The position numbers and the translations under genes are program-made. A model generated the notes under the pieces. The model had not been told where the DNA came from, made no database searches, and saw only the letters and a list, made by a program, of their open reading frames with translations. A DNA stretch of 64,000 bases. Origin: Octopus sinensis (taxonomy: Eukaryota). Positions 34,928-64,000 of the stretch are shown here, piece after piece. The stretch is from assembly GCF_006345805.1 (NCBI RefSeq), contig NC_043008.1, forward strand, positions 17,484,001-17,548,000, given 5' to 3'. How positions within the stretch are numbered: the first letter of the stretch is position 1; every line of letters starts with the position of its first letter.

Positions 34928-34973
<46 letters not shown>

Positions 34974-35024
34974 GTATGTATATATATATATTATTGTTTG
35001 TTTTGTTTTGTTTTTCCAGTTTCA

Positions 35025-35620: not shown

Positions 35621-35685
35621 TATATATATAATAATATATATATATATATATATATAATATATATATATATATATAGTATATATAT

Positions 35686-35717
<32 letters not shown>

Positions 35718-35723
35718 ATATAC

Positions 35724-35754
<31 letters not shown>

Positions 35755-36070
35755 CATATATATATAGATATTATATATATATATACATATATATATATGT
35801 ATATATATATACAATATATTATATGTATATATTATATAATATATATTTATGTATGTATATATATATGATATGTATATATATATATGCATATGTATATATA
35901 TGATATATGTGCACATAGATATATATACATGTAAATATATATGTACATATATATATATTTATATGTATGTATATATACCTGTATTTATATATGTATGTAT
36001 ATATATATATATATGTATATATGTGGTGAATGTATATATGTATATATATATATATATATATGTATGTACG

Positions 36071-36126
<56 letters not shown>

Positions 36127-44440: not shown

Positions 44441-45010
44441 AGCGGCGAGCTGGCAGAAACGTTAGCACGCCGGCCGAAATGCGTAGCGGTATTTCGTTGG
44501 CGGCGAGCTGGCAGAATCGTTAGCACGCCGGGCAAAATACATAGACGTATTTCGTCTGCCGTTACGTTCTGAGTTCAAATTCCGCCGAGGTCGACTTTGC
44601 CTGTCATTCTTTCGGGATCGATAAATTAAGTACCAGTTACGCACTGGGGTCGATGTAATCGACTTAATCAGTTTGTCTGTCCTTGTTTGTCCTCTCTGTG
44701 TTTAGCCCCTTGTGGGTAGTAAAGAAATAGGTATTTCGTCTGCCGCTACGTTCTAAGTTCAAATTCCACCGAGGTCGACTTTGCCTTTCATCCTTTCGGG
44801 GTCGATTAAATAAGTACCAGTTATGCACCGGGTTCGATGTAATCGACTTAATCCGTTTGTCTGTCCTTGTTTGTCCTCTCTGTGTTTAGCCCCTTGTGGG
44901 TAGTAAAGAAATAGGTATTTCGTCTGCCTCTACGTTCTGAGTTCAAATTCCGCCGAGGTCGACTTCGCCTTAATCTTTTCGGTGTCGATAAATTAAGAAC
45001 CAGTTGTGCC
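44441..45010 (+). mobile_element. Nested/tandem SINE family 1 with target-site duplication
   Basis: Host head ends GGTATTTCGT (44488-44497); a full-length SINE follows; tail A is followed by GGTATTTCGT at 44730 and again at 44914. Confidence 0.9.
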
Positions 45011-45344
45011 AAGTGTAGAAAATAAAAAAATAAAAGCATCTATGCAATTGACCTGATTTATTTTTATTTTCAGAAACTGATATAAAAATAGAATATTTAT
45101 AAGGATGTTGCTTAGATGCCAAGATATAAGAATTTTCAAAGGGTAGCACAACGGTTTAGCATTTTTCAAAATGAACATAGAACGTAGCGGCAGACGAAAC
45201 ACCACTAAGCATTTCCCCCGGCGTCCTAACGATTCTGCAAGCTCACAGCCTTAAGATTATATTAAGATAATAGTAATAATAACATTTTCAAATTTTGCAC
45301 AAGGCCAATAATTTTAGAGAGTTGGAGTTACTTCATTCTCTGAT

Positions 45345-45718
45345 TATTTTACTTTTTCAGTCATTATACTGTTGGAGCACCGCCTGTAGTCGAAGAAATC
45401 GACGCCAGGACTAGTAGTTGATGGAATAAACCTAGTACTTATTCTATGAGTTCTTTTGCAGAACCGTTAACTTTGGAGGACGTGAACACACGAACATCGG
45501 TTGTCAAGCGACGGTGGGGGGACAAACACACATATACATATATATATATATATATATACACGACGGTCTTCTTTCAGTTCCCGTCTACCAAATCCACTCA
45601 CTTTGGCTGTCCGAGGCCATAGTAGAAGTAACTGGCCTAAGGTGCCACGCGGTGGCACTGAACCCGGAACCATGTGGTTGGGAAGCAAGCTTCTTACCAC
45701 AGAGCGACGCCTGCGCCC
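45345..45718 (-). mobile_element. SINE family 3
   Basis: Family motifs. Confidence 0.8.
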
Positions 45719-46447
45719 TTACGATTATAAATTTTATATTCTAAATTTGTATGCTTTCGAAATAACTAAGGAGTGGATTCTAAAGTTTCATGTTATACAT
45801 TTGAAAGGATTTAATAAAGTTCGTGGAGAAGTTATCATTTGTCACGTGCATGCAGCATCTTGCAAGAAGCAAATCAATTATATAAATGTGCCCCTGATGC
45901 AGTCTCCTAGTAACTAACTAAAAGAAAACTATATTTGAAAAAGAAAAGGCTAACACATGCCACACAGCGTGTTTTCACTTATCCACCCTCCAGCCGACGA
46001 AACATATTGCTAAAAATCGGAAATAAAGCAAAGGGAATGAATGCAAACAGTATTTAAAGAACAGAGATCTGGTGTGCTAACACAATGCTGAAAGCCATTC
46101 GGTGATGGAATTTCTGACCAAAAGTGTCATTTCAGATTTTCAATGTCACGTAGTAAGCATTTAAAATGGGAAAATGGAGAAATAACAACTATAATGCAAC
46201 CATCGCACGGAATTGCCAGGGTTTTCAAACAAACATGTGACACGATTTCATCTAATAAATGCCAAACGCAGAACATGCTTTATCTTAATGTAACCGCTTC
46301 CAAAAATATCTTTTATTTCTATATATTCTGCACCGTTCTTCTGGTCTTTTCTTACGTTATTACTTTCAATGTTTGGACTGCAACCTTCTCTAAGCTCAAC
46401 ACTTAATAGATTGTATTGACAAAAGAGGTTATATTTCTAAACGGCGA

Positions 46448-46494
<47 letters not shown>

Positions 46495-46685
46495 GTGTGT
46501 GTTGTGTGTGTGTTGTGAATGTGTGTGTTAATGCTTATTTTTATGGTCAGCGGTTCGGAAAAACAAATCGATAAAATAGCTACTAGGCTTAAAATAATAA
46601 GTGCTTGGGTCGAAATGTTCGACTAAATCCTTCAAGGCGATTCTCCAGCATGACCGCAGTCAAATGATTGAAACAATAATATATA

Positions 46686-46735
<50 letters not shown>

Positions 46736-46789
46736 TATATATATATATACATACATATATATATATTATACATATTTTTTTTTTCCGTA

Positions 46790-46990
46790 CTGTTTTCAGT
46801 CATTTGACTGCGGCCATGCTGGAGCCACGCCTTTTAGAGTGGTGAAAGAATACAGCAGATCACCACCTCCTGCCGGAGCCTCGTGAGCTTTTAGGTGTTT
46901 TCGCTCAATAAACACACACAACGCCCGGTCTGGGAATCGAAACCGCGATCCTCCGACCGCAAGTCCGCTGCCCTAACCACTAGGCCATTG
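46790..46990 (-). mobile_element. Chimeric SINE: family 2 head joined to family 3 tail
   Basis: Same junction as 35025-35218. Confidence 0.7.
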
Positions 46991-47089
46991 CATATACATA
47001 CAATATATATATACAGCATACATACATACAATATATACATATATATATATACACATACATACAATAAATATATATATATATACATACAT

Positions 47090-47125
<36 letters not shown>

Positions 47126-48663
47126 CATACATACAATAAATATATATATACATACATACATACATACAATAAATATATATATATACATACATACATACAT
47201 ACAATAAATATATATATACATACATACATACAATATATATATATATACATACATACATACAATATATATATATATACATACAATATATATATATATACAT
47301 ACATACAATATATATATATATATACATACAATATATATATATACATACATACATACAATATATATATATATATACATACAACATACATATATATATACAT
47401 ACATACATACATATATAATTACAATACATACATACAATATATATATATATCACATACATACATACAATATATATATATACATACATACATACAATATATA
47501 TTATTATACATACATACATACAATATATATATATTACATACATACATACAATATATAATATATACATACATACAATATATATATATATATACATACAATA
47601 TATATATATATACATACAATATATATATATATACATACCTAATACATACCATATATATATATATACATACAATATATATATACAATACAATATATATATA
47701 TATACATACAATATATATATCTAATATATATACATACAATAGATATATACATACATACATACAATATATATATATATATACACATAAAATAAATATATAT
47801 ATTATATATATTATATATACATAAATACAATAACAATATATATAATATATAAACATAAATATATATATATTATATATAGATATATATACATAAATACATA
47901 CAATATATATATAATATATACATAATATATATTATATATATATATATATATACATAAATACTACCATATATATATATATATACATAAATATATATATATT
48001 ATATATATATATATATACATAAATACATACAATATATATATATATATACATAAATATATATATATATACATAAATATATATATATATATATATATTATAC
48101 ATAAATCATACACATATATATATTATATATATATATAAATACATACAATATATATATATAATATACCATAATACATACAATATATATATTATATATGCAT
48201 AAATACATACAATATATATATATATATATGCATAAATACATACAATATATATATATATATACATAAAATACATACAATATATTATATATATAACATACAA
48301 TATATTATATATAATATATACATAAATACATACAATAGATAATATATATATATACAATACATACATTACTACATATATATATATATATATATATACATAA
48401 ATACATACAATATATATATATATATATATACATAAATACATACAAATATATATATATATATATAATATATATATATACATAATACATACACTATATATAT
48501 ACATAAATACATACATATCTATATATATATATATATACATACAATATATATAATTATATATACATAAATACATACAATATATATATATACATAAATACAT
48601 ACCATATATATATATATATACATAAATACATACAATATATATATATATTATACATAAATACAT

Positions 48664-48700
<37 letters not shown>

Positions 48701-49041
48701 CTCATAAAACATACAATATATATATATATATACATATACATAAATACATACATATATATATATATATATAATACATAAATACATACAATATATATATATA
48801 TAATATATATACATAAATACATACAATATATATATATATATATAATATATATAACATAAATACATACAATATTATATATATATATATATATATATATCTA
48901 TACATAAATACAATACAATATATATATAATATATATATATATATACATAAAACATACAAATATATATATACATATTATATATATATATATACATAAATAC
49001 ATACAATAATATATATATATATATAATATACATAAATACAT

Positions 49042-49081
<40 letters not shown>

Positions 49082-49115
49082 AATACATACATATATATAT
49101 ATATATATAATATAT
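46990..49115. repeat. ~2.1 kb low-complexity satellite built from CATACATACAA(TA)n / CATAAATACATACAA(TA)n units
   Basis: Direct reading. Confidence 0.9.
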
Positions 49116-49699
49116 CTCCCCACCACCACCACCACGACCATCCATTTGAAGGTTCTGATTGAGCAGTCATTTAATGAAATACCTACTTCCTTCTACTTGT
49201 GAAACGCTAGCATTTTGTTTGATGAAGTCTGAATATAACTTTCGTGTACTTCGTAAAACAAGTTAATGATTCTCTCTTCGACTTGTCAGGAATTAAACAA
49301 GTCTGAAAAGCAAGCGTATATTTACATAATTGTTAGCTAGAACATTATACAGAAAATATATAAATAAAATATGAGTTTCTGGTGCGACTCTTACCTGTAT
49401 CATTACCTCGGTGAAACGACTACCGCAATAAAATATTTAGAATGGCAGGTCTTTTGAGAACACACGGTTTGAAAATCAGTTCATACGACACAAGTATGAA
49501 AATATATTTCATTTTTAGACTGGCCTTACTAGTTATATGCAATGAAGAGAGTTGCATTATTAAATAAAAGAACATGAACTTAGTGGTGGTATTCTCTCAT
49601 TCTAATGTACTAATGTGAATTGTTTTATGAATTTTGGAACCCTTTGGTTTGAGAGCTAAATTTGAAACTCAAATTTCGATATGCTCAAGTAAAAGTATT

Positions 49700-51005
49700 A
49701 AAATAGAGAAAATAATTGAATTTAACACATTTAAAGAAGTTTTAGAAAAGGAAGGTGGTGACGTAAAATTGTCACCACCACTAGAAATGCTAAAGGAAAT
49801 GGGAAAAAGAAAATTGTGTATAAAGTCTACTCTATCAAGGAAAAAATGTTAGAAAATGAAACGACAGACGAAATTGAAAAGGCGTTGAGGCCAATCTGGC
49901 CAGACATAGCGTATCTTGCTAGAGGAAAACAATACGGCACTGTTGAGGTATATTTTGAGAATAAAGAAAAAGCGAAGGAAAGCTCTGTAAAATCGATGAA
50001 AACGGAATGGGTAATCCTTCTACCCGCATAGCTTGGAAGAAGAACTTCCAAGGTCAGGGTGGAGGGAATCTTCCCACTCTAAAATAGACGTGGCCTGGGT
50101 GGCGGCGGCTTTGCATCTAGGAGGCGGAACCACTAACTGGCACCGTAATATCTTGGAATTAATAATATAAAGTAAGGTGGAAAATTTAGAGATGCTTTCC
50201 GAAACGGTGACAGTTGGAGAAACAATAATGAAAGTATGGGTAGAGGGCAGAGTCTCTCGATGCTCTAAATGTGGCCAAAAGAGCCACATTATAGCGGACT
50301 GCACTCTGAAAAATAGGCCAAACCAGGAGAGAGCAGAGAAGTAACTGGAAGGATGGAAGAAAGAAATGAGGAAGATGGATATCAAGCTAGGGGAAGAAAA
50401 CAGAGGGAGAAGAAAAAAAACTGCTTCAGTGAACCCCAGCCCGTACCCACCCCACTTATACCTTCTCAACCCCACCCTCCCCTGCAGACAAGAAAACCAC
50501 CAATTCCCCACCGACACAAAAAAGAATAAAGAACAGCAATCATACAAAAAACCGCAAAACGCCTCTAACACTTGTTTTGTTTGCTCTTTATTGAAAGGTG
50601 TAAAAATGGAAGTGGTGGAGAAGTTAGTGCAAGGGAGAGATGTAAAGGTGATAGACATGAAGGGAAAGAAAAGAGAAAAAAACTGATTTTAGGTGCATTG
50701 GTGCCAGAAAGCAGAATGAGAATAATTGAAACTATAAAGAAAGCGCGGAATACAGAGGAATGAGATGCGACAATGAGGAAGTACCGGACGAAATAGAATA
50801 TGATAAATTAGTGGGTCAATACGGTATTAACTTTAATTGGATATGAAAGCACGTTAATGACGCTACTGAGGTGGGGTTAAGTGGCACTTCTTCATAAATC
50901 ATTATCATTTATCATTCATATTTTCATAACTTTATTTTAATTGTTACACGTCTCCCACATGTCTTGTGTTGTCCACTCAATGTTTGGACCTTGTGGCTGG
51001 CATTA
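49700..51005 (+). pseudogene. Old, degraded copy of the ORF1-only element
   Basis: KEGGDVKLSPP...IVYKVY...YLARGKQYGTVEVYF...LGRRTSKVRVEG...MKVWVEGRVSRCSKCGQKSHIIADC aligns to the array ORF; degenerate 3' UTR and tail at ~50850-51005. Confidence 0.8.
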
Positions 51006-51239
51006 AAATTACATTTAAAGAAGTGTACTTTACACCAAGTAAATTGTAATCGGATTATCACGAGTTCAAAGCAAACCGAAACCAGCTCTTTTTTTGTTGT
51101 TGGCTCTCTTTTTTTCTTTTGCTTGTAAACTTTGTATTCTGGATGTTTTTCAAAGAAAACCTTAATCGATAAATTCCAGTCTAACCTATAAAACGTACAC
51201 GCGCACGCATAAATAATTAATTTTTGGTGATAAAATATA

Positions 51240-51394
51240 TTCATTTCTATTCTAGGCACAATGCTCAAAATTTTGGGGGAGGGGGCCAGTCGATTAGATC
51301 GACCCCAGTACGCAAATTCTACATAAATTATGGACCCCAAAAAGGATAAAAGGCAAAGTCGACCTCGCCGGAATTTGAAGACAGACGAAATACC
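51240..51394 (-). mobile_element. SINE family 1 (tail B) beginning at GGTATTTCGT, host of the adjacent Tx1-like insertion
   Basis: Body and tail-B motifs; the head upstream of GGTATTTCGT is replaced by a tail-A element. Confidence 0.8.
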
Positions 51395-51395
51395 A

Positions 51396-51870
51396 ATTTC
51401 TTTACTGCCCACAAGAGGCCAAACACCGAAATGGACAAAACAAGTGATAGGGATCAGTAATACGTTACGATTTTACATAAAATATGAATATAACAATTAT
51501 ATAAAATATTTTCAAAATATTTTCAAATATATAAAATATTTTCAAAAATTAACAATACAGAAACAACACAAATGTAGAGATGATGAGGCCACACTCCGAC
51601 CCCACAAGCCACGATGTATCGCTGATACCTTTTGATTGGTTCTTCTTTCATAGCCTATTCACACGGTTCCTTGCACGCACAACACTCGTGCAACATGCTT
51701 CCATCTCTTTTTGAACATACTCTCCGACAGACGCCGCTTCTCCAGCCATATCTTCCTTTTCAAATGAAAAGTAAAAAAAAAAAAAATGATCATAATTCGT
51801 GGCCAGAGATAAAGTTGTCTGTCTTAATCCCTTTTATCCTAGTCTTTCATACTGCCGCTTTCGTTTCCAA
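51396..51870 (-). pseudogene. Tx1/L1-like LINE ORF2 C-terminus + 3' UTR + tail A
   Basis: AV*KTRIKGIKTDNFISGHEL*SFF...FHLKRKIWLEKRRLSESMFKKRWKHVARV resembles L1/Tx1 ORF2 C-termini (W..R...E.....F..RW); ends gtttggcctcttgtgggcagtaaagaaatt. Confidence 0.6.
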
Positions 51871-51954
51871 GACACCATTTCGATCAATGTTATATATATA
51901 TATACATATATATCTAATTTTATAATAGAAATTATTAGTCGAAAAAAGTGGATT

Positions 51955-53070
51955 GACGGCGAGCTGGCAGGATGATGGTGGCGTCGAGAAAAATACTTTG
52001 CTGTATTTGTTCCGGGTCTTTACATTCTGAGTTCAAATCACGCCGTGCCAACTTCGCCTTTCATTACTTCGGGATTGATAAAATATAATATTAGCCATAT
52101 TCTGAGATAAATGATCCCGAATAATGCCTCCCTTCAAATAACGAAGGCCTTGTGCTAAGCTTAGGAATCTTTGTTATGAAAAGTCCAAAGCCGGCAGGCA
52201 GATTCATTAGGGTGTCTGCAAAGACGATTCGTGCTATTTAATCCAAATCTTTAATTCAAATTCTAATCCCACCGAGGTGATCATTGTACTTCATAATTCC
52301 AGGGTTGATAATAAAATACAGGTGAAGTGCTGGGTTTGATGCTATAGTCTAACAAATAACCCCGAAATAACTAGACCCAATATCATTCCAAGAGCAGTAG
52401 AATGCAGACTTTACAGCAGCATCGTTAGAGTGTGGAACAAAATGCGTTGCGGCATTTAGTTGTAGATCTTTAGTCTCTGAGTTCAAATCAGTTCACCTTT
52501 GCCTTTCAGGTACCTTAAAACAGAATACCATTCATATACTATAATTGATTAAATCGGCTTTTTTAGAGGAGGTCAGCTCCTCTCAAAAGACCTAGCATAG
52601 ATCCTAAATTGGAACTAAAAACCATCGTGTGGTGCTCGAGTATGACCACAACCGCATAGCTGAATCGAATGAAAGAATATGCACAGTGTAAAATGTCGAA
52701 ACACCGGTTTTCCGAAATTCCTTTTTACCCTACTGAATCTAGCACAATGTTATTAATCACACATTCTCCTGCAAGTTGTTCTCCACTGAAGAATTTCAAC
52801 AGCGATTTAGATATTCACGTTCGAATCTGCCGGAAAGTGCTAAGAATGCATATTTAATGTCATCTTTCGGAATCATTGCCAGCAATTTCAGTGTTGGGGG
52901 ATAAGTCGATTACATCGACCCCAGCGCTCAACTAGTACTTATTTTATCGACCCAGAAAGGATGACAGACAAGATCTTCCTCGGTGGATATTGAACTCAAA
53001 GTAAATACAGGCGAAATGCTGCTAAGCATTTCACCCGGCGTGCTTACCATTCTACCAGCTCACCGCCTTG
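51955..53070. mobile_element. Several degenerate SINE family 1 copies
   Basis: gcgagctggcag heads and gagttcaaat B-box-like motifs. Confidence 0.65.
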
Positions 53071-54417
53071 TCTTGCAGAATTATTAAAAAAGCTAGAATA
53101 GAATATTAGAAATGTATGATAACCTTCGTCATTTAATTAGGTCATTTTATTATACTTTCAAGTCGCCTAATATTTCACCTAACCTCTGTAGTTTACGGTA
53201 CCAATGAAAAACTTTCCTATTATGAAATACGATTGTAACTAATTACTCTTTCCGTTAAAATAATAATTACATAACTGTTACATTTCATATCTGTCAAAGC
53301 TAAATAATGTACATAATTCCTCATCTCTTAAATATAGAACTCTAAATTGATTGGAAATAAAGAAAAATTTTTTTTTAAATCATTTTAGGGGTGATTGCTT
53401 TCTTATGACGGTTGAAATGCATGAATTTCTATTGCTTTTTTCCGCTGAAGTATTTGCATGACATGTTTTTCAGAACATGGAGTAGAACAACAGGAGGTGG
53501 GTAAGATTCCGAGTTCGATTCCAGGCATACCTTAGGAACGAGAACCCAGGTTCGAAATTTCCCCAAGACACCTGATGAAGGCTGGAGGGTATATAACAGC
53601 CAAAATGTTGTGTTAACAACAAACAAAATGAGGACAAATATCTGTCAAATGTAAATAATTTCCAATCAATTTTTTGTATTACAAATTCAGATTCCATAAA
53701 ACAGAATACCATTCATGTATTATAATTGATTAAATCGGGTTTCTTTTAGGAGGTCAGCTCCTCTCAAAGACCTAGCATAGATCCTAATTTGGAACTAAAA
53801 ATCATCTGGAAACAAATTAAAACAAAACTTGCTGACCCTTTCAAGATATTTAAAATGTAGAAAGGGAATTTTCCATGATGATTACAGTTTGAACGGTACG
53901 AGGTGGGAGAGTTGTGACGTTTAACAATTATGGATTTTAACTGTTTCAGTTTTAAACCGCGTGGTGGAAAAAGAAACTGAAAACCCCCTGTGAAAAGAGA
54001 GAAAATTCAATTTATGTGGGCGAGCTTCCACGAAAGTCCGCGTTACCTCTTCATGGGCGGGCCGGGTTGGAATTACACAAAAGGCTGTTGGGGTCCATTT
54101 ATTTTTTCTCATTTCCGCACTATCCATGAAGTATATTTCTTTAATCTTGTATATAGGTGTGAGTGGATGATACAGAATATGAAATTTATCACTTTTTTTT
54201 ATAGTTTTATAAGTTGTACATATAGCACTACATATAAACAAAATGATTTAGTATATCGATTCATACCAGTACAAATACGAGGAAAATTGACTTATATTTC
54301 ATCAGAATATCTGAAAAAAGAACAAACAATAGTTCCACAAAAGGTTCAGTTGGACCTCAATGACCATATATTATGCTATAACATCCATACGACTGGACAT
54401 TTCTATGTATATATATA

Positions 54418-54634
54418 TATTTCTTTACTACCCACAAGGGGTTAAACACAGAGGGGACAAACAAGGACAGACAAAGGGATTAAGTCGATTACATCGACCC
54501 CAGTGCGTAACTGGTACTTGATTTATTGACCCCGAAAAGATGAAAGGCAAAGTTGACCTCGGCGGAATTTGAACTCGGAATGCAACGACAGACGAAATAC
54601 GGTTACGAATTTCGCCCGGCGTGCTAACGTTTCT
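54418..54634 (-). mobile_element. SINE family 1, tail A, lacking the first ~14 nt and fused to the array
   Basis: agaaacgttagcacgccgggcgaaa...aaccccttgtgggtagtaaagaaata. Confidence 0.9.
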
Positions 54635-54783
54635 TATTTCTTTATTACCCACTAGGGGCGACACAGAAAGGGACACTAAGAAACATGGGGACATATAACA
54701 TTATAATTAAACTTTATGAACATGAATTGTTAAACGAAAAAATGATTAAATGAAAGCGATACCAACGGCCCCGTCCGTCAGCA

Positions 54784-56193
54784 TCACTTACCTGTCCTTT
54801 GTTTTTCATAGTCACTTGAATGTTCCTTGCCAATACGAACAAATTCCATATCCATTCTTACTCCGAAATACTCATCCATATTTTCCACGAATTCATCGCT
54901 CATTCTTATATCTTTCACCTCCCAATTCTCGCATTCACACATCACCATAAAGTCACCTATGTTCTTCTTTTCAATCACAGCATACCTAGTCTCACCAACA
55001 TCATACCATTTATACTCTTCCATTAGACTTTTAACTTCTTTCTGTTCAGTCATAGTACAAATGTACATCCTGATATCGTTTTCAATCTCTTGTGTGTGTG
55101 TATTCTTTTTTTTCTTTTGTTTTCTTGTTGGGGGGGAGCGGGTGGGTTCAATGTCTGCATGGGTAGGGTGGGACTCAGAGGGCGTGGGTGGTTTTGGGGT
55201 GGATTGGAGTTCCATATTGTTTTCTTTTCCACGTATTCTTCTCTTCCTCTTACTTCCAGCTTCCTTCCATTTCTGTGTATTCTCTTCCTCTGTTTCCTTC
55301 TCCTCTGGTTTCTGCTTCTCTCTCTCTGGTTCGGAATCCATTTCTTTCCCTGGGGGAGGGCAGAAGGCTCTTATGTGACCCCTCAGGCCACACTTGTAAC
55401 AACGTGGAGCCCTGCCCTCCACCCACACTCTCATGATCACTTCTCCCAGTCTGATGCTTTCCGTCAGGTCCACCAGTACCTCGGTCTCTGCCTGTACGTT
55501 CAGCTCCACTGTTACGCCTCTCCAGCCCTCGGACTTAACCGAGGCATGGAGAATATCCACTTCGTCCTCGTGGCCGTGATCACAGCCGCCACAATCCATT
55601 CTGCCTCCACGTTTGGTGGCACTCCCTCCACCCTTATTCGTGTAATCCTCCTGTTTAAATACGTAGGTAACAGTTTACCTTTCCGACTTCACCGCCTTCG
55701 CCGCCATCTTCCTCGCTGCAGATTCACTTTTAAAATGCACAACTACGGTCCCATACTTGGATCCTCGAGTCAGAAAATTTATTTCCTCCTCAGTTCTTCG
55801 CAGGGCTTCCTCTATCCATTCCATGGATACAACTTCTACCCTCTTCCTTTCGTTTGCGCACACCCTGTAAACAATGGTCCTCTTATCATACCATTCTTTT
55901 CTCCTGGGTGTCGGTGATAGTTCCACCTCACCGCTTTCCTTTTTCATGTGTTTCTGGTAACTTGGTAGCTTAGCTTGCCAAGTCGACCCCTTTCTCTTCC
56001 GCCTTCTTGGTTACACCGGCATAAGTATAACTCAGCTTCTTTTCCAATTTCCTGCTGCCATTTCTAGCTCCTTCTCAGACAAGTCTGATAAAGACTCGAA
56101 AACTCCAGCCTTTTCCTCCATCAGCTTCACTGCAATTGCCTGTTCCAGTTCCTCATCTGTCGTGGACAAGTCTGTTAGAGACTCATAGTCCAT
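54784..56193 (-). CDS. Unit 1 Gag-like ORF1 (Tx1/L1 type, CX2CX4HX4C knuckle), ~470 aa, frameshifted in this sequence
   Basis: MDYESLTDLSTTDEELEQ start; VWVEGRAPRCYKCGLRGHIRAFC; ends KQRTGK*. Confidence 0.75.
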
Positions 56194-56527
56194 TTCCTTC
56201 TGTCTGACAGACCGAAAACGGCCGCCAAAACAGAAAAAAGTTTAACGCGCTGAACGAGCGAAACGCGAAACCGCGTCAACGCCGTTCAGAATTTCCACAA
56301 CAACAACCACGCTTTTTGTTCTTTTTTACCGAATTTTCAGGAGCCGAAAAAAACACAACCGACGTCAAACGAAGTGGTGATTTCTTTATTACCCACTAGG
56401 GGCGACACAGAAGGGGACACCAACAGACATGGGGACATAGAACATTATAATTAAACTTTATGAACATGAATTGTTAAACGAAAAAATGATTAAATGAAAG
56501 CGATACCAACGGCCCCGTCCGTCAGCA

Positions 56528-57931
56528 TCACTTACCTGTCCTTTGTTTTTCATAGTCACTTGAATGTTCCTTGCCAATACGAACAAATTCCATATCCATT
56601 CTTACTCCGAAATACTCATCCATATTTTCCACGAATTCATCGCTCATTCTTATATCTTTCACCTCCAATTCTCGCATTCACACATCACATAAAGTCACCT
56701 ATGTTCTTCTTTTCAATCACAGCATACCTAGTCTCACCAACATCATACCATTTATACTCTTCCATTAGACTTTTAACTTCTTTCTGTTCAGTCATAGTAC
56801 AAATGTACGGCCTGATATCGATTTCAATCTCTTGTGTGTGTGTATTCTTTTTTTTCTTTTGTTTTCTTGTTGGGGGGGAGCGGGTGGTTCAATGTCTGCA
56901 TGGATAGGGTGGGACTCAGAGGGCGTGGGTGGTTTTGGGGTGGATTGGAGTTCCATATTATTTTCTTTTCCACGTATTCTTCTCTTCCTCTTACTTCCAG
57001 CTTCCTTCCATTTCTGTGTATTCTCTTCCTCTGTTTCCTTCTCCTCTGGTTTCTGCTTCTCTCTCTCTGGTTCGGGATCCATTTCTTTCCCTGGGGGAGG
57101 GCAGAAGGCTCTTATGTGACCCCTCAGGCCACACTTGTAACAACGTGGAGCCCTGCCCTCCACCCACACTCTCATGATCACTTCTCCCAGTCTGATGCTT
57201 TCCGTCAGGTCCACCAGTACCTCGGTCTCTGCCTGTACGTTCAGCTCCACTGTTACGCCTCTCCAGCCCTCGGACTTAACCGAGGCATGGAGAATATCAC
57301 TTCGTCCTCGTGGCCGCTGATCACAGCCGCCACATCCATTCTGCCTCCACGTTTGGTGGCACTCCCTCCACCCTTATTCGTGTAATCCTCCTGTTTAAAT
57401 ACGTAGGTAACAGTGTTACCTTTTCCGACTTCACCGCCTTCGCGCCATCTTCCTCGCTGCAGATTCACTTTTAAAATGCACAACTACGGTCCCATACTTG
57501 GATCCTCGAGTCAGAAAATTTATTTCCTCCTCAGTTCTTCGCAGGGCTTCCTCTATCCATTCCATGGTTACAACTTCTACCCTCTTCCTTTCGTTTGCGA
57601 ACACCCTGTAAACAATGGTCCTCTTATCATACCATTCTTTTCTCCTGGGTGTCGGTGATAGTTCCACCTCACCGCTTTCCTTTTTCATGTGTTTCTGGTA
57701 ACTTGGTAGCTTGGCCAAGTCGACCCCTTTCTCTCCGCCTTCTTGGTTACACCGGCATAAGTATACATCTCTTTTCCAATTCCTTGCTGCCATTTCTAGC
57801 TCCTTCTCAGACGTAGGCGAGTCTGATAAAGACTCGAAAACTCCAGCCTTTTCCTCCATCAGCTTCACTGCAATTGCCTGTTCCAGTTCCTCATCTGTCG
57901 TGGACAAGTCTGTTAGAGACTCATAGTCCAT
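56528..57931 (-). CDS. Unit 2 Gag-like ORF1, frameshifted in this sequence
   Basis: ORF pieces 57431-57931 and 56792-57250 are near-identical to unit 1. Confidence 0.7.
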
Positions 57932-58265
57932 TTCCTTCTGTCTGACAGACCGAAAACGGCCGCCAAAACAGAAAAAAGTTTAACGCGCTGAACGAGCGAA
58001 ACGCGAAACCGCGTCAACGCCGTTCAGAATTTCCACAACAACAACCACGCTTTTTGTTCTTTTTTACCGAATTTTACAGAGCGTAAAAAAACACGACCGA
58101 CGTCAAACGAAGTGGTGATTTCTTTATTACCCACTAGGGGCGACACAGAAGGGGACACCAAAAGACATGGGGACATAAAACATTATAATTAAACTTTATG
58201 AACATGAATTGTTAAACGAAAAAATGATTAAATGAAAGCGATACCAACGGCCCCGTCCGTCAGCA

Positions 58266-59677
58266 TCACTTACCTGTCCTTTGTTTTTCATAGTCACTTG
58301 AATGTTCCTTGCCAATACGAACAAATTCCATATCCATTCTTACTCCGAAATACTCATCCATATTTTCCACGAATTCATCGCTCATTCTTATATCTTTCAC
58401 CTCCCAATTCTCGCATTCACACATCACCATAAAGTCACCTATGTTCTTCTTTTCAATCACAGCATACCTAGTCTCACCAACATCATACCATTTATACTCT
58501 TCCATTAGACTTTTAACTTCTTTCTGTTCAGTCATAGTACAAATGTACGGCCTGATATCGATTTCAATCTCTTGTGTGTGTGTATTCTTTTTTTTCTTTT
58601 GTTTTCTTGTTGGGGGGGAGCGGGTGGGTTCAATGTCTGCATGGATAGGGTGGGACTCAGAGGGCGTGGGTGGTTTTGGGGTGGATTGGAGTTCCATATT
58701 ATTTTTTTCCACGTATTCTTCTCTTCCTCTTACTTCCAGCTTCCTTCCATTTCTGTGTATTCTCTTCCTCTGTTTCCTTCTCCTCTGGTTTCTGCTTCTC
58801 TCTCTCTGGTTCGGGATCCATTTCTTTCCCTGGGGGAGGGCAGAAGGCTCTTATGTGACCCCTCAGGCCACACTTGTAACAACGTGGAGCCCTGCCCTCC
58901 ACCCACACTCTCATGATCACTTCTCCCAGTCTGATGCTTTCCGTCAGGTCCACCAGTACCTCGGTCTCTGCCTGTACGTTCAGCTCCACTGTTACGCCTC
59001 TCCAGCCCTCGGACTTAACCGAGGCATGGAGAATATCTACTTCGTCCTCGTGGCCGCTGATCACAGCCGCCACAATCCATTCTGCCTCCACGTTGGTGGC
59101 ACTCCCTCCACCCTTATTCGTGTAATCCTCCTGTTTAAATACGTAGGTAACAGTGTTACCTTTTCCGACTTCACCGCCTTCGCCGCCATCTTCCTCGCTG
59201 CAGATTCACTTTTAAAATGCACAACTACGGTCCCATACTTGGATCCTCGAGTCAGAAAATTTATTTCCTCCTCAGTTCTTCGCAGGGCTTCCTCTATCCA
59301 TTCCATGGTTACAACTTCTACCCTCTTCCTTTCGTTTGCGAACACCCTGTAAACAATGGTCCTCTTATCATACCATTCTTTTCTCCTGGGTGTCGGTGAT
59401 AGTTCCACCTCACCGCTTTCCTTTTTCATGTGTTTCTGGTAACTTGGTAGCTTGGCCAAGTCGACCCCTTTCTCTTCCGCCTTCTTGGTTACACCGGCAT
59501 AAGTATAACTCAGCTTCTTTTCCAATTTCCTTGCTGCCATTTCTAGCTCCTTCTCAGACGTAGGCGAGTCTGATAAAGACTCGAAAACTCCAGCCTTTTC
59601 CTCCATCAGCTTCACTGCAATTGCCTGTTCCAGTTCCTCATCTGTCGTGGACAGTCTGTTAGAGACTCATAGTCCAT
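58266..59677 (-). CDS. Unit 3 Gag-like ORF1, frameshifted in this sequence
   Basis: ORF pieces 59061-59615, 58699-59091 and 58266-58712 tile the protein. Confidence 0.7.
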
Positions 59678-60007
59678 TTCCTTCTGTCTGACAGACCGAA
59701 AACGGCGCCAAAACAGAAAAAAGTTTAACGCGCTGAACGAGCGAAACGCGAAACCGCGTCAACGCCGTTCAGAATTTCCACAACAACAACCACGCTTTTT
59801 GTTCTTTTTTACCGAATTTTACAGAGCGTAAAAAACACGACCGACGTCAAACGAAGTGGTGATTTCTTTATTACCCACTAGGGGCGACACAGAAGGGGAC
59901 ACCAAAAACATGGGGACATAGAACATTATAATTAAACTTTATGAACATGAATTGTAAACGAAAAAATGATTAAATGAAAGCGATACCAACGGCCCCGTCC
60001 GTCAGCA

Positions 60008-61414
60008 TCACTTACCTGTCCTTTGTTTTTCATAGTCACTTGAATGTTCCTTGCCAATACGAACAAATTCCATATCCATTCTTACTCCGAAATACTCATC
60101 CATATTTTCCACGAATTCATCGCTCATTCTTATATCTTTCACCTCCCAATTCTCGCATTCACACATCACAAAAGTCACCTATGTTCTTCTTTTCAATCAC
60201 AGCATACCTAGTCTCACCAACATCATACCATTTATACTCTTCCATTAGACTTTTAACTTCTTTCTGTTCAGTCATAGTACAAATGTACGGCCTGATATCG
60301 ATTTCAATCTCTTGTGTGTGTGTATTCTTTTTTTTCTTTTGTTTTCTTGTTGGGGGGGAGCGGGTGGGTTCAATGTCTGCATGGATAGGGTGGGACTCAG
60401 AGGGCGTGGGTGGTTTTGGGGTGGATTGGAGTTCCATATTATTTTCTTTTCCGCGTATTCTTCTCTTCCTCTTACTTCCAGCTTCCTTCCATTTCTGTGT
60501 ATTCTCTTCCTCTGTTTCCTTCTCCTCTGGTTTCTGCTTCTCTCTCTCTGGTTCGGGATCCATTTCTTTCCCTGGGGGAGGGCAGAAGGCTCTTATGTGA
60601 CCCCTCAGGCCACACTTGTAACAACGTGGAGCCCTGCCCTCCACCCACACTCTCATGATCACTTCTCCCAGTCTGATGCTTTCCGTCAGGTCCACCAGTA
60701 CCTCGGTCTCTGCCTGTACGTTCAGCTCCACTGTTACGCCTCTCCAGCCCTCGGACTTAACCGAGGCATGGAGAATATCTACTTCGTCCTCGTGGCCGCT
60801 GATCACAGCCGCCACAATCCATTCTGCCTCCACGTTTGGTGGCACCTCCACCCTTATTCGTGTAATCCCCTGTTAAATACGTAGGTAACAGTGTTACCTT
60901 TTCCGACTTCACCGCCTTCGCCGCCATCTTCCTCGCTGCAGATTCACTTTTAAAATGCACAACTACGGTCCCATACTTGGATCCTCGAGTCAGAAAATTT
61001 ATTTCCTCCTCAGTTCTTCGCAGGGCTTCCTCTATCCATTCCATGGTTACAACTTCTACCCTCTTCCTTTCGTTTGCGAACACCCTGTAAACAATGGTCC
61101 TCTTATCATACCATTCTTTTCTCCTGGGTGTCGGTGATAGTTCCACCTCACCGCTTTCCTTTTTCATGTGTTTCTGGTAACTTGGTAGCTTGGCCAAGTC
61201 GACCCCTTTCTCTTCCGCCTTCTTGGTTACACCGGCATAAGTATAACTCAGCTTCTTTTCCAAATCCTCGCTGCCATTTCTAGCTCCTTCTCAGACGTAG
61301 GCGAGTCTGATAAAGACTCGAAAACTCCAGCCTTTTCTCCATCAGCTTCACTGCAATTGCCTGTTCCAGTTCCTCATCTGTCGTGGACAAGTCTGTTAGA
61401 GACTCATAGTCCAT
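60008..61414 (-). CDS. Unit 4 Gag-like ORF1, frameshifted in this sequence
   Basis: ORF pieces 60757-61263 and 60159-60851. Confidence 0.7.
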
Positions 61415-61761
61415 TTCCTTCTGTCTGACAGACCGAAAACGGCCGCCAAAACAGAAAAAAGTTTAACGCGCTGAACGAGCGAAACGCGAAACCGCGTCAA
61501 CGCCGTTCAGAATTTCCACAACAACAACAACGCTTTTTGTTCTTTTTTACCGAATTTTCAGGAGCCGAAAAAAACACAACCGACGTCAAACGAAGTGGTG
61601 ATTTCTTTATTACCCACTAGGGGCTACATAGAGGGGACATTACAAACATTGGGGACATAGAACATCACAATTACATATATATGAGCAAAATGGAATATGA
61701 AAATGATATATGAGAGTGATACCGACGGCCCCATCCGCCAGCATCACTTATCTGTCCTTCT

Positions 61762-63085
61762 TCACCCATTTCCAATTAGCATTCCTTGTTTTCCTATCAC
61801 AACATTCGTTTTTCTTTTAGCCATCTCTATCCATTCATCTTTCATTTCCACTGACCTCCAACACACACCCTCTTCCTCAAACCTTCTCATCAATATACCC
61901 GTATCATCACTATCCACAGCCGTGTAGCTACAATCTTCGTGTTCGTACCACTTGGTCAACACCCGCTTTTTAACGTTTTGTATGTCTTTCCCATGTATAA
62001 CACATAAAAAATGGGTCTCGGGACTTTCTTTGCTTTGTGTGTGTGTTTTTGATTTTCTTGTAGGAGGGGAGTGGGTGGAATCACTGTTTGCCGGGGAGGG
62101 TCGGGACTCCAAGGGTATGGGTGGTGTCGGGGTGGGTTGGGGCTTCGCACAGTTTTTCTTTTTCCTTCTTTTTCTCTTTGTTCCCCCTTCTTTCCACTCT
62201 TGTTGCATCTCTTCTTCTGTCGTTTCCTTCTCTGTTTGTTTCTGTTTATTTTCTTCCTCTCCTGAGGCTTCCTCAACGCTTTCCTTTTCTTTTTCCTTTG
62301 GTGGGGGAGGGCAGTAGGCTCTTATGTGCCCCCTTTGGCCACACTTGTAGCACCTGGGCGCCCTACCCTCCACCCACACTCTCATAATAATATTTCCAGT
62401 TTTTATGCTGTCCGTAATCCTCTCTATAACATCCGCCTCCGTTTGAATGTTCATAACTAGTGTGGCACCTCTCACGCCTTCATTCTTCATAATGGCGTGG
62501 AGGATGTCCACTTTATCTTCATTTCCTTTTATAACCGCAGCTGTTATTAATTCGCCTTCTAGGTGTGGAGGTATTCCTTCCACCCTAATTCTAGTTGTCC
62601 GCCTATTCAGATACGAGGGTAACAAGTAAAACTTTTCAGTACTCACCACCTTGGCTGCTACATTCCTGGCTGCTTTTTCACTTTTAAATTGCACCGTTAT
62701 GGTTCCGTATTGTAATCCTTTTGTCATGTACACAATTCCTCTCCTGTCTGCTGAGAGCCTCTTCAATTGCTTCCATGTTAATTACTTCCATCTTTCTCCC
62801 TCCATTCATAAAAACTTTATATTTAATGGTTCTACGATGGAACCAGTCTTCGCGCCCTACTGGAGGCAGCAGCTCCACCTCTCCGTTTTCGTCCTCCTTC
62901 ACAAACTCCTGGAGGCCCGTCAACTTAGCCAGGTCTATCTCTCTTTCCATTGACTTCTTCGTTACACCTGCGTAGGTGCCTTCCATCTTTTTCACCGCCA
63001 ACTCCTCCTCAGATGACGATACTTCCGTCGAAATTTCAGAGAAATTTCTCCCTTCCATCTCCTCCGTTTGATGGAGGCGGCTCAT
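61762..63085 (-). CDS. Unit 5 divergent Gag-like ORF1 (~440 aa, one frameshift near 62750)
   Basis: ORFs 62684-63085 and 61762-62766; VWVEGRAPRCYKCGQRGHIRAYC. Confidence 0.8.
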
Positions 63086-63418
63086 AATCGCCTCAGACCG
63101 AAAAACGGCCTCCCGAACCGAAAAAGTTTAACGCGCCGAACGAGCGAAACGCGAAACCGCGCCAACGCCGTTCAGAGTCTCCACAACAACAACCACGCTT
63201 TTTTTTTTTTCTTTTTTACCGAATTTTCAGGAGCCGAAAAAAACACAACCGACGTCAAACGAAGTGGTGATTTCTTTATTACCCACTAAGGGGCGACACA
63301 GAAGGGGACACCAAAAGACATGGGGACATAAAACATTATAATTAGACTTTATGAAAATGAATTGTTAAACGAAAAAATGATTAAATGAAAGCGATACCAA
63401 CGGCCCCGTCCGTCAGCA

Positions 63419-64000
63419 TCACTTACCTGTCCTTTGTTTTTCATAGTCACTTGAATGTTCCTTGCCAATACGAACAAATTCCATATCCATTCTTACTCCG
63501 AAATACTCATCCATATTTTCCACGAATTCATCGCTCATTCTTATATCTTTCACCTCCCAATTCTCGCATTCACACATCACCATAAAGTCACTATGTTCTT
63601 CTTTTCAATCACAGCATACCTAGTCTCACAAACATCATACCATTTATACTCTTCCATTAGACTTTTAACTTCTTTCTGTTCAGTCATAGTACAAATGTAC
63701 GGCCTGATATCTATTTCAATCTCTGTGTGTGTGTATTCTTTTTTTTCTTTTGTTTTCTTGTTGGGGGGGAGCGGGTGGGTTCAATGTCTGCATGGATAGG
63801 GTGGGACTCAGAGGGCGTGGGTGGTTTTGGGGTGGATTGGAGTTCCATATTATTTTCTTTTCCACGTATTCTTCTCTTCCTCTTACTTCAGCAGCTTCCT
63901 TCCATTTCTGTGTATCTCTTCCTCTGTTTCCTTCTCCTCTGGTTTCTGCTTCTCTCTCTCTGGTTCGGGATCCATTTCTTTCCCTGGGGGAGGGCAGAAG
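63419..64000 (-). CDS. Unit 6 ORF1 C-terminal part (truncated by window edge)
   Basis: Near-identical to the unit 1-4 C-terminal region. Confidence 0.7.

What the first reader, a model, noticed from the sequence alone, without database searches (positions are those of the whole stretch)
54635..64000. Head-to-tail array of Gag(ORF1)-only retroelements, HeT-A-like architecture
Seen: at least six ~1.67-1.75 kb units in one orientation. Each has a ~185-bp CpG-rich leader, one ORF with a Tx1/L1-type V.VEGR.PRC..C...GH....C knuckle, a ~150-bp 3' UTR and a hairpin+AATAAAGAAAT tail, with no RT or endonuclease. Unit boundaries are precise tail-to-head joins with no spacer or poly(A), and every 3' end points toward the unique flanking DNA. 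Known: ORF1-only non-LTR elements exist (Drosophila HeT-A, which forms arrays of this polarity, and mammalian HAL1), but I know of none described from the Tx1 group in cephalopods. Inference: a non-autonomous element that supplies its own RNA-binding ORF1p, borrows ORF2 from a Tx1-like partner, and builds arrays by serial target-primed reverse transcription. The scattered 1-nt frameshifts differ between units and may be long-read errors.
Basis: partly seen in the sequence, partly recalled or inferred. Interest (0 to 1): 0.88.

Follow-up and report, generated by a model that had tools for sequence, protein, structure and literature searches.

The report
Octopus ORF1-only retroposon tandem array
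The region is a real head-to-tail array of a small octopus "half-LINE" that keeps only the RNA-binding ORF1 and most likely borrows the copying enzyme of a neighbouring full LINE through a shared 3' tail; it is a new variant of known things (HAL1-type elements, transposon-derived tandem arrays), not a telomere-type HeT-A system.

Summary
On the minus strand, 54,636-64,000 carries six 3' tails: five complete units (1,744/1,738/1,744/1,739/1,669 bp) and one cut by the window end. Each unit has a 184-186-nt CpG-rich leader, one ORF with a CCHC knuckle, a 148-161-nt 3' UTR, a GTGGGTAATAAAGAAAT tail, precise tail-to-head joins, and no APE or RT.

The ORF is homologous to ORF1 of two-ORF L1-group LINEs found in Octopus vulgaris (E=3e-40). 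Those LINEs and a tRNA-type SINE share the unit's ~40-nt tail.

Corrections:
- Unit 5 belongs to a second subfamily (47% aa identity).
- The array ends in a SINE (54,419-54,635), not unique DNA.
- O. vulgaris holds arrays or copies at seven chromosome-internal loci, so nothing is telomeric.
- At least four ORF1-only lineages exist, with intact ORFs (A vs B dN/dS 0.18).

Many different tail-to-head junctions, 5'-truncated units and a 3.9-kb chain inside one 13-bp target-site duplication point to retrotransposition as the seed of the joins. A duplicated 5.2-kb three-unit block shows arrays then grow by DNA-level duplication.

The window's frameshifts look like long-read consensus errors. Tx1 versus L1 placement, transcription and the ORF1 fold remain untested.

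The parts
54419..54635 (-). tRNA-type SINE (positions 15-230 of the SINE). It has the same orientation as the units, is joined directly to the tail of U1, and ends in GTGGGTAGTAAAGAAAT. It is the true 3' end of the chain.
54636..56379 (-). Unit U1, subfamily A, 1744 bp, complete. It is the most divergent A unit (1.4-1.9% substitutions from the others).
56380..58117 (-). Unit U2, subfamily A, 1738 bp
58118..59861 (-). Unit U3, subfamily A, 1744 bp. Closest to U2 (6 substitutions in the careful alignment).
59862..61600 (-). Unit U4, subfamily A, 1739 bp
61601..63269 (-). Unit U5, subfamily B, 1669 bp. It is 93% identical over its whole length to B units in an O. vulgaris array. Only the first ~100 nt of its leader are A-like (93%).
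63270..64000 (-). Unit U6, subfamily A, 3' 731 bp only (consensus positions 1019-1749). Cut by the window end, so the array continues beyond the window.
56194..56379 (-). Leader of U1 (186 nt, CpG o/e 1.96), a putative internal promoter/5' UTR. Equivalent leaders: 57932-58117, 59678-59861, 61415-61600, 63086-63269.
   Evidence: Promoter function is inferred, not tested.
54784..56193 (-). ORF1 of U1, from ATG 56193 to TGA 54784. Broken by frameshifts in the window; 472 aa when intact in O. vulgaris.
55360..55401 (-). CCHC zinc knuckle CYKCGLRGHIRAFC of U1. Others at 57101-57142, 58840-58881, 60582-60623 and 62311-62352.
   Evidence: Pfam zf-CCHC is marginal (E=8e-4 to 0.06); PDB profile hits to retroviral NC knuckles at E~2e-3
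54636..54783 (-). 3' UTR of U1 (148 nt). Its last ~40 nt (54636-54676) form the tail module GTGTCCC..TCTGTGTCGCCCCTAGTGGGTAATAAAGAAAT, shared with the LINE and the SINE. It contains an AATAAA signal.
61762..62766 (-). Longest open frame in the window array (334 aa, U5). Used as query for the exhaustive HMMER search and for structure prediction.

Best explanation
The region is part of a head-to-tail chain of a non-autonomous, ORF1-only retroposon of the L1 group. Two subfamilies are present (A x5, B x1), and the chain is capped at its 3' end by a SINE.

Proposed mechanism:
1. Each unit is transcribed from its CpG-rich leader (inferred).
2. It encodes an ORF1p with two alpha/beta domains, one CCHC knuckle, a basic linker and a ~95-aa C-terminal domain. 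This protein presumably coats its own RNA (inferred).
3. The ~40-nt 3' tail module, shared with a co-resident two-ORF APE+RT LINE and with a tRNA-type SINE, recruits that LINE's ORF2p in trans for target-primed reverse transcription. The sharing is shown; the recognition is inferred from the established SINE/LINE common-tail rule.
4. This enzyme repeatedly places new copies directly behind an existing tail. It could do so by priming on the tail sequence, or by end-to-end template jumping within a single event. Either route creates precise tail-to-head joins between units, SINEs and LINEs.
5. Once a dimer exists, the array grows and is homogenised by unequal crossing-over or block duplication (shown in a sister array).

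The window's frameshifts are most likely assembly errors. Intact copies exist in O. vulgaris.
For: - ORF1 identity: blastp of the intact A ORF against ORF1 of a full-length LINE gives E=3e-40, 33% identity over ~230 aa. The architecture aligns across A, B and three LINE ORF1s.
- No ORF2.
- Partner LINE: Exo_endo_phos 7e-14, RVT_1 1e-30, zf-RVT 9e-9; closest solved RT is human L1 ORF2p at 1.8e-37.
- Shared tail in 12 sequences of units, LINE and SINE.
- Retrotransposition hallmarks:
  - at least 8 different 5' start points of the unit after a tail;
  - tail-to-internal joins, i.e. 5'-truncated units at consensus positions 1238, 1426 and 1469, and 5'-truncated LINEs;
  - an A23 tail on a C-type unit;
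  - a solitary copy (L005);
  - copies on seven chromosomes;
  - a 3,906-bp composite (A-like unit, D-like unit, SINE) bracketed by an exact 13-14-bp direct repeat at its two outer edges.
- DNA-level growth: in L001 V2=V5 (0 differences), V3~V6 (3), V4~V7 (5), i.e. a duplicated 5.2-kb three-unit block. Two B units in the same array give dN/dS 0.92. All five window junctions are identical, and neighbours U2/U3 are the most similar pair.
- Coding constraint: A vs B dN/dS 0.18; A copies between loci 0.29-0.76. Intact 471-472-aa (A) and 442-aa (B) ORFs in O. vulgaris.
- Precedent: insertion-site preference makes TE dimers that then expand (PMC5932611). HAL1 is an ORF1-only L1 derivative (PMC5753468).
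Against: - No transcript, protein or mobility evidence could be obtained.
- The partner LINE's ORF1 is only 33-35% identical to the unit's, so the pairing rests on ~40 nt of shared tail plus physical association.
- All six units in the window are frameshifted, so this particular array may be dead even if the errors hypothesis is right for most indels.
- All window junctions are identical, so within this window there is no direct sign of independent insertions other than the embedded B unit.
- The TSD control was crude (1% of random window pairs, inflated by repeats in the sampled loci).
- Two arrays (L001, L003) share 557 bp of upstream flank at 93%. Some dispersal of arrays may therefore be by segmental duplication rather than retrotransposition.
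- The source species of the window is not established. Its A units are 3-4.5% from every O. vulgaris unit.
Confidence: 0.7

Rival explanations
1. Pure satellite. One ORF1-only copy (or a dimer) landed here once. Everything else in this window is DNA-level tandem amplification and gene conversion, and the units in this array are no longer mobile.
For: All five junctions in the window are identical. Adjacent units are the most similar and the edge unit the most divergent. A sister array has a clean higher-order repeat. Within-array dN/dS is ~0.9. Every window unit is frameshifted.
Against: A subfamily-B unit sits between A units with the same precise joins. Other loci show many junction types, 5' truncations, a poly(A)-tailed unit, a solitary copy and a TSD-bracketed chain. 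Units in different arrays can be closer to each other (0.7-1.2%) than units within one array (2.8%). This rival explains how the local array grew, which the best explanation already includes, but not where the family and its joins came from.
Confidence: 0.17
2. HeT-A-like end-targeting element. ORF1-only units extend or heal chromosome ends by repeated addition, with 3' ends facing the chromosome interior.
For: Gag/ORF1-only coding capacity, one orientation, and precise head-to-tail joins without poly(A).
Against: The seven O. vulgaris loci lie 13.9-157 Mb inside chromosomes of 41-226 Mb. There are no (TTAGGG)n runs in the window or next to arrays. Arrays have ordinary flanks on both sides. 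A chain carries a TSD, which means endonuclease-type integration into internal DNA. The partner encodes an APE endonuclease. SINEs and full LINEs take part in the same chains.
Confidence: 0.04
3. Domesticated host gene family. A tandem cluster of ORF1-derived genes (L1TD1-like) is kept for a cellular function, and the retroelement features are relics.
For: Long-term purifying selection (A vs B dN/dS 0.18). Intact ORFs in several units. A CpG-rich leader and an AATAAA signal at the end of each unit.
Against: The tail module is shared with an active-looking LINE and a SINE. Copies show 5' truncations, chains and TSDs. Array composition varies across seven loci. Evolution within an array is near-neutral. 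At least four divergent lineages behave the same way. Purifying selection is expected for any ORF1 needed in cis for retrotransposition.
Confidence: 0.05
4. Assembly artefact. A collapsed or expanded repeat was mis-assembled into a false array.
For: The indel excess in the window units suggests poorly polished long-read consensus. Unit number cannot be verified without reads.
Against: An independent, higher-quality O. vulgaris assembly has the same kind of arrays at several loci, with internal variants and higher-order structure. The window units differ from each other by private substitutions, and the array includes a different subfamily unit.
Confidence: 0.03

Closest known systems
HAL1 ('half-L1') of mammals
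   Same: A non-autonomous L1-group derivative that keeps ORF1 and lacks ORF2. It arose more than once (PMC5753468, citing Bao & Jurka 2010). The octopus units likewise keep only an ORF1 homologous to that of two-ORF L1-group LINEs, and they exist as at least four lineages.
   Different: - HAL1 is dispersed and poly(A)-tailed (my knowledge). The octopus units end in a specific ~40-nt tail shared with a LINE and a SINE, and commonly sit in head-to-tail arrays.
- The octopus ORF1 has a CCHC knuckle and an extra C-terminal domain.
- The lineages are deeply diverged (32-47% aa) with intact ORFs.
Drosophila HeT-A (with TART/TAHRE)
   Same: A Gag/ORF1-only non-LTR element that relies on another element's RT and forms one-orientation head-to-tail arrays. 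Consecutive insertions give tail-to-head and tail-to-internal junctions (PMC5932611, section 7).
   Different: HeT-A is telomere-specific and attaches to chromosome ends. The octopus arrays are chromosome-internal and flanked on both sides. At least one chain has a TSD, and the partner has an APE endonuclease. HeT-A also belongs to a different clade (Jockey, my knowledge).
TE-derived tandem arrays by double insertion followed by unequal exchange (McGurk & Barbash 2018; e.g. the Drosophila R1/DMRT1B array)
   Same: Insertion-site preference creates tandem dimers, including tail-to-internal junctions for non-LTR elements, and dimers then expand into arrays (PMC5932611). The octopus data show both layers: diverse junctions and higher-order repeats.
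   Different: Here the preferred 'site' is the element family's own 3' tail. Chains therefore mix ORF1-only units, SINEs and LINEs, and a whole chain can sit inside one TSD.
SINE/LINE common-tail partnership (Ohshima & Okada; octopus tRNA-derived SINEs described in 1994, cited in PMC4758252)
   Same: A short non-autonomous element carries the 3' end of its partner LINE. The SINE, the ORF1-only units and the LINE share the GCCCCTWGTGGGYARTAA module.
   Different: The dependent element here is protein-coding (ORF1) rather than a pol III SINE. Whether the SINE in the window is one of the 1994 families was not checked.
Sequence-specific Tx1-clade LINEs (Tx1, Keno, Mutsu, Kibi, Koshi, Dewa)
   Same: L1-group APE LINEs whose ORF1 carries a CCHC knuckle and which insert into specific repeated targets, producing clustered or tandem copies (my knowledge, plus the mention of Tx1 families in PMC4758252).
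   Different: Clade membership is not established here. The apparent target is the family's own tail, not a host multicopy gene or microsatellite.

Membership tests
Non-LTR retrotransposon ORF1 (L1-group, knuckle-bearing type) | Significant sequence homology to ORF1 of an element that also encodes APE+RT | tested here: met
   blastp E=3e-40 to E=7e-26 against three ORF1s that lie upstream of APE/RT ORFs or belong to the same family
Non-LTR retrotransposon ORF1 (L1-group, knuckle-bearing type) | CCHC zinc knuckle after the nucleic-acid-binding domains | tested here: met
   C-x2-C-x4-H-x4-C is present in all five complete units. Pfam zf-CCHC is marginal (E 8e-4, below the gathering score). PDB profile hits to NC knuckles at E~2e-3.
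Non-LTR retrotransposon ORF1 (L1-group, knuckle-bearing type) | RRM fold of the central domain(s) | tested here: inconclusive
   Two AlphaFold2 runs gave pLDDT 42.8 and 36.5. No RRM hit by Pfam or PDB sequence search.
HAL1-type ORF1-only non-autonomous LINE derivative | ORF1 present and ORF2 (APE/RT) absent in the complete element between its own 5' and 3' ends | tested here: met
   Units of 1.67-1.92 kb delimited tail-to-tail; tblastn with ORF2 finds nothing
HAL1-type ORF1-only non-autonomous LINE derivative | Mobilised as a unit: dispersed copies, 5' truncations, TSDs | tested here: met
   Seven loci on seven chromosomes; a solitary copy in L005; truncated copies; a TSD around the L006 chain. 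Only one TSD was found, and none around a single solitary unit.
HAL1-type ORF1-only non-autonomous LINE derivative | Descent from mammalian L1 (HAL1 proper) | tested here: not met
   Octopus-specific. The closest relatives are all Octopus proteins. It is an analogue of HAL1, not a member.
HeT-A-type telomeric retrotransposon | Located at chromosome ends / next to telomeric sequence | tested here: not met
   Loci at 13.9/41.2, 32.3/118.9, 37.7/84.7, 135.1/182.4, 142.9/225.7 and 157.0/215.6 Mb. No TTAGGG runs in the window.
HeT-A-type telomeric retrotransposon | Gag-only coding capacity with head-to-tail one-orientation arrays | tested here: met
HeT-A-type telomeric retrotransposon | End-addition without endonuclease or TSD | tested here: not met
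   A 13-14-bp TSD brackets a chain. The partner encodes APE.
L1 group of non-LTR retrotransposons (partner LINE) | APE + RT + C-terminal zinc-binding domain, with the RT closest to L1 ORF2p | tested here: met
   PF03372, PF00078 and PF13966. Human L1 ORF2p at 1.8e-37 against R2 at 2e-24.
Tx1 clade (within the L1 group) | RT phylogeny placing the element with Tx1 rather than L1 sensu stricto | not testable with these tools
   No reference Tx1 sequences were available. The RT search returned unnamed hits only.
SINE/LINE-type tail partnership | The 3'-terminal sequence of the dependent element matches the 3' end of the autonomous LINE | tested here: met
   ~30-40 nt are conserved in all 12 aligned tails of units A-D, the LINE and the SINE
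SINE/LINE-type tail partnership | The LINE RT actually recognises the tail and mobilises the dependent element | not testable with these tools
   Needs a retrotransposition or in vitro TPRT assay
TE-derived satellite (double insertion followed by unequal exchange) | Higher-order repeat or identical multi-unit blocks inside arrays | tested here: met
   L001 V2=V5, V3~V6, V4~V7
TE-derived satellite (double insertion followed by unequal exchange) | Independent tail-to-head or tail-to-internal junctions showing repeated insertion at the same kind of site | tested here: met
   At least 8 junction types, including three internal truncation points and joins to SINE and LINE

The most novel reading that the evidence does not exclude
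Octopus genomes may host an old, diversified guild of protein-coding 'half-LINEs'. At least four ORF1-only lineages are 32-47% identical to each other, and each is kept intact by selection. All of them, together with a SINE, would parasitise one L1-group ORF2p through a common 40-nt tail. That RT would build multi-element concatemers (unit-unit, unit-SINE, LINE-unit) in single integration events by end-to-end template jumping. The arrays would then be natural products of processive RNA-to-RNA jumping by an L1-type enzyme, later amplified by recombination.
Probability: 0.3. Interest if true: 0.65.

Novelty: new variant of a known kind. Interest (0 to 1): 0.45.

Why it matters
- ORF1-only LINE derivatives are rare and mostly known from mammals (HAL1) and Drosophila telomeres (HeT-A). 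A third, independent and much more diversified case bears on an open question: why does supplying one's own ORF1p help an RNA steal ORF2p despite cis-preference? This case has intact ORFs under purifying selection and an identifiable tail-sharing LINE and SINE.
- The tail-to-head chains, one of them enclosed in a single target-site duplication, offer a natural record of how an L1-group reverse transcriptase makes concatemers.
- They also document how transposons turn into satellite-like arrays.
- Practically, these arrays generate chimeric gene models in the O. vulgaris annotation and should be masked.

Tried and rejected
1. Pfam, PDB sequence and PDB profile searches of the ORF found only a marginal CCHC knuckle. 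There was no RRM or L1 ORF1p hit.
2. Two AlphaFold2 predictions (U5 334 aa; U3 184 aa) gave pLDDT 42.8 and 36.5. That is too poor for fold search.
3. Rfam and tRNA scans of the window found nothing. The SINE is too diverged for ARAGORN.
4. The word-indexed protein search with a 10-sequence ORF1 profile gave one extra hit only. The RT search gave 1,764 hits but no named Tx1 or L1 references, so clade placement failed.
5. The window's flank (44,001-54,636) was searched for in four O. vulgaris loci to find an orthologous array. Only SINE matches turned up, so no orthologue was found.
6. A TSD search around the solitary L005 copy found no repeat of 8 nt or more.
7. Considered and rejected: that U5 is an A/B recombinant. 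It is 93% identical over its full length to O. vulgaris B units, and only the first ~100 nt are shared between A and B.
8. Considered and rejected: an LTR or retrovirus-like 'Gag'. There are no LTRs, there is a LINE-type tail, and the homology is to LINE ORF1.
9. One search's coordinates mixed two loci held in one file. This was redone.

A working majority consensus of the 1.75-kb unit was used internally for mapping. Its DNA was not printed. The element is a non-LTR retroposon, not a virus or provirus.

Full report
OBSERVATION. The repeat is real and lies on the minus strand.
- The 17-nt tail GTGGGTAATAAAGAAAT occurs at 54636, 56380, 58118, 59862, 61601 and 63270. At <=2 mismatches the whole window holds 14 matches, against 0.05 expected.
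- Five of these tails are followed with no spacer by CACCACTTCGTTTGACGTCGG.
- This defines five complete units of 1744, 1738, 1744, 1739 and 1669 bp, plus a sixth cut by the window end.
- Each unit has a 184-186-nt leader with CpG o/e ~2.0, against 0.93 in the rest of the window.
- Each has one ORF with the knuckle CYKCG(L/Q)RGHIRA(F/Y)C, a 148-161-nt 3' UTR, and the tail.
- There is no endonuclease or RT similarity.
Unit 5 is a different subfamily (see below). The last unit does not touch unique DNA but a same-orientation SINE (54419-54635) that ends in GTGGGTAGTAAAGAAAT.

WHAT THE ORF IS.
- Family libraries see only a marginal CCHC knuckle.
- The word-indexed search found just seven annotated relatives. 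All are 'hypothetical' proteins of Octopus vulgaris assembly GCA_951406725.2.
- Fetching their loci gave the key material. L002 contains full-length LINEs with ORF1, APE (PF03372) and RT (PF00078 plus zf-RVT).
- The RT of these LINEs is closest to human L1 ORF2p among solved structures (1.8e-37, against 2e-24 for R2).
- The array ORF is homologous to these LINE ORF1s (E=3e-40, 33% over ~230 aa), with the same domain order. It is therefore a LINE ORF1 of the L1 group.
- Tx1 versus L1 could not be resolved, because the RT search returned no named references.
- The exhaustive HMMER search found 225 relatives. The closest are all from Octopus species.
- The fold could not be tested: two AlphaFold2 runs gave pLDDT 43 and 37.

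THE TAIL COMMUNITY.
- The LINE ends in ...TGTCCCATCTGTGTTCGCCCCTTGTGGGTAATAATAAAAC.
- The SINE ends in ...TGTCCCCTCTGTGTTTAGCCCCTTGTGGGTAGTAAAGAAAT.
- The units end in ...GTGTCCCCTTCTGTGTCGCCCCTAGTGGGTAATAAAGAAAT.
- In an alignment of 12 tails the last ~30 nt are almost invariant. They include a 4-bp stem that never varies, so there is no covariation support.
- This is the classical common-tail signature of dependence on one LINE's RT. tRNA-derived octopus SINEs and the common-tail concept are cited in PMC4758252.

NOT A ONE-OFF DELETION. At least four unit types are delimited tail-to-tail:

| Type | Length | ORF |
|---|---|---|
| A | 1.75 kb | 472 aa |
| B | 1.67-1.69 kb | 442 aa |
| C | 1.79 kb | 333 aa, ending in A23 |
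| D | 1.92 kb | 493 aa |

- They are 32-47% identical to each other and to LINE ORF1s, and none has ORF2 remnants.
- In O. vulgaris, A and B have fully intact ORFs.
- NG86 estimates give dN/dS 0.18 for A vs B, and 0.29-0.76 for A copies at different loci.
- Two B units in the same array give 0.92, as expected if arrays grow by neutral DNA duplication while the source lineages are selected for a working ORF1.
- Window unit U5 is a B element. It is 93% identical along its whole length to O. vulgaris B units and shares only the first ~100 nt of its leader with A.

HOW ARRAYS FORM. Two layers are visible.

(i) Retrotransposition.
- After a tail, the next element may be a unit leader beginning at any of at least eight positions. 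It may also be a 5'-truncated unit (consensus 1238, 1426, 1469), a SINE, a 5'-truncated LINE, or a full LINE 5' UTR.
- Three O. vulgaris arrays run straight into a LINE.
- A solitary, older A copy exists (L005, 88% identity).
- In L006 a 3,906-bp composite is bracketed by an exact 13-14-bp direct repeat (ATATATTTAACCT) at precisely its two outer boundaries. The composite consists of 22 nt of SINE head, an A-like unit, a D-like unit and a SINE. The crude random control gave 1%, inflated by repeats.
- That is one target-site duplication around a whole chain. Chains can therefore be inserted in a single event, either by end-to-end template jumping of the RT or by retrotransposition of a read-through multi-unit RNA.

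(ii) DNA-level amplification.
- In L001, units V2 and V5 are identical. V3/V6 differ at 3 columns and V4/V7 at 5, so a 5.2-kb three-unit block was duplicated. Junction variants alternate accordingly.
- In the window all junctions are identical. Neighbours U2/U3 are the closest pair and the edge unit U1 is the most divergent.
- This two-step route (insertion preference makes dimers, unequal exchange expands them) is the model of McGurk & Barbash (PMC5932611).

NOT HeT-A-LIKE IN BIOLOGY.
- All seven O. vulgaris loci are deep inside chromosomes: 13.9/41.2, 32.3/118.9, 37.7/84.7, 135.1/182.4, 142.9/225.7 and 157.0/215.6 Mb, plus one on a 118-Mb chromosome.
- The window has no telomeric repeats.
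- The only TTAGGG-like run seen is a ~70-bp degenerate interstitial stretch 13 kb from the elements in L002.
- The partner encodes an endonuclease, and a TSD is present. The resemblance to HeT-A is therefore architectural only.

FRAMESHIFTS.
- Relative to the A consensus, the window units carry 29 private indels. These are 25 deletions and 4 insertions, with 18 in short homopolymers. U2 and U3 differ by 6 substitutions but 14 indel events.
- The indel/substitution ratio is 0.51 in the window, against 0.11 among ten O. vulgaris array units.
Only read pile-ups can confirm it.
- The window's species is not established. Its A units are 3-4.5% from all O. vulgaris units, and its flank is absent from the fetched loci.

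VERDICT.
- It is wrong in its HeT-A framing and incomplete on array growth.
- I found no description of these elements in the searchable literature. Octopus LINE work concerns RTE and Dong elements (PMC9115989). Repbase and Dfam could not be checked.
- I rate it a new variant of known kinds, of moderate interest.

Noticed in passing
window 16515-17036 (+) and 44499-45005 (+); also L002 30031-30446 (-) and L004 22394-22800 (-): The SINE occurs as the same multimer at several loci. A full copy (positions 1-230) is followed directly by copies that always start at position 48/49. This suggests either a mobile dimeric/trimeric SINE variant or a fixed re-initiation point.
   Followed up: partly
L006 6569-10500: A 3.9-kb composite (22 nt of SINE head, an A-like unit, a D-like unit whose leader starts with a SINE-head-like CAGAAACGTCAGCACGCC, and a SINE) is enclosed by one exact 13-14-bp direct repeat, ATATATTTAACCT. 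Short SINE-head pieces sit at the 5' junctions.
   Followed up: partly
L002 8321-8338, 8657-8674, 10408-10425: Three tails are followed by the same AGAAATCTACCCACGTGT. AGAAAT repeats the end of the tail. CTACCCAC is the exact reverse complement of the tail's GTGGGTAG, so the unit's 5' end could pair with its 3' tail (a panhandle). Its significance is unknown.
   Followed up: no
L001 4680-5241 and L003 8153-8692: The ~557 bp immediately upstream of two arrays on different chromosomes are 93% identical and were not found elsewhere in the fetched DNA. This could be a segmental duplication of array plus flank, or an unrecognised repeat or longer 5' region.
   Followed up: partly
window 49765-50326 (+) and 51396-51864 (-): An older, diverged ORF1 fragment (35-40% aa identity to A and to LINE ORF1), and a 5'-truncated LINE 3' end whose tail (51396) is joined directly to a 5'-truncated SINE (51288-51385). 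So the same tail-to-head habit appears outside the array.
   Followed up: partly
window 46992-49115: A ~2.1-kb degenerate (AT)n/(TATG-like) microsatellite with GC 9-12% and GC skew about -0.95. There are several other long (TA)n, (AAT)n and (ATAG)n tracts in the window (for example 9297-9718, 34683-34991, 35614-36144). No host gene was detected in the 64 kb.
   Followed up: no
O. vulgaris gene models P0001, P0002, P0007 (L001, L004, L003) and P0003, P0004, P0005, P0006: Annotated 'hypothetical proteins' are stitched from the C-terminal ~95-aa domain of successive array units. Others fuse that domain to unrelated neighbours: a CFAP/hydin-like gene, a HAUS1-like gene, and a LINE APE fragment. 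These are probably annotation artefacts caused by unmasked arrays, though exonisation cannot be excluded.
   Followed up: partly
L003 13855-13900; L001 tails at 6966, 8686 and similar positions: Some units end in AATAAAAAA or in a 23-nt A run instead of AATAAAGAAAT. This suggests occasional reverse transcription of polyadenylated transcripts cleaved right after the AATAAA that is embedded in the tail.
   Followed up: no
L002 25200-25290: A short degenerate interstitial telomere-like run (TTAGGG/TTAGAG variants, ~70-90 bp), 13 kb from the nearest unit. It is not adjacent to any array.
   Followed up: yes
all A/B/C units, first ~40 nt of the leader: The 5'-terminal module CGTGTTTTTTTCGGCTCC is shared by lineages whose ORFs are only 33-47% identical. 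The first ~100 nt of the A and B leaders are 93% identical in the window. This points to a conserved 5' signal (promoter or 5'-end recognition) or to modular exchange between lineages.
   Followed up: partly
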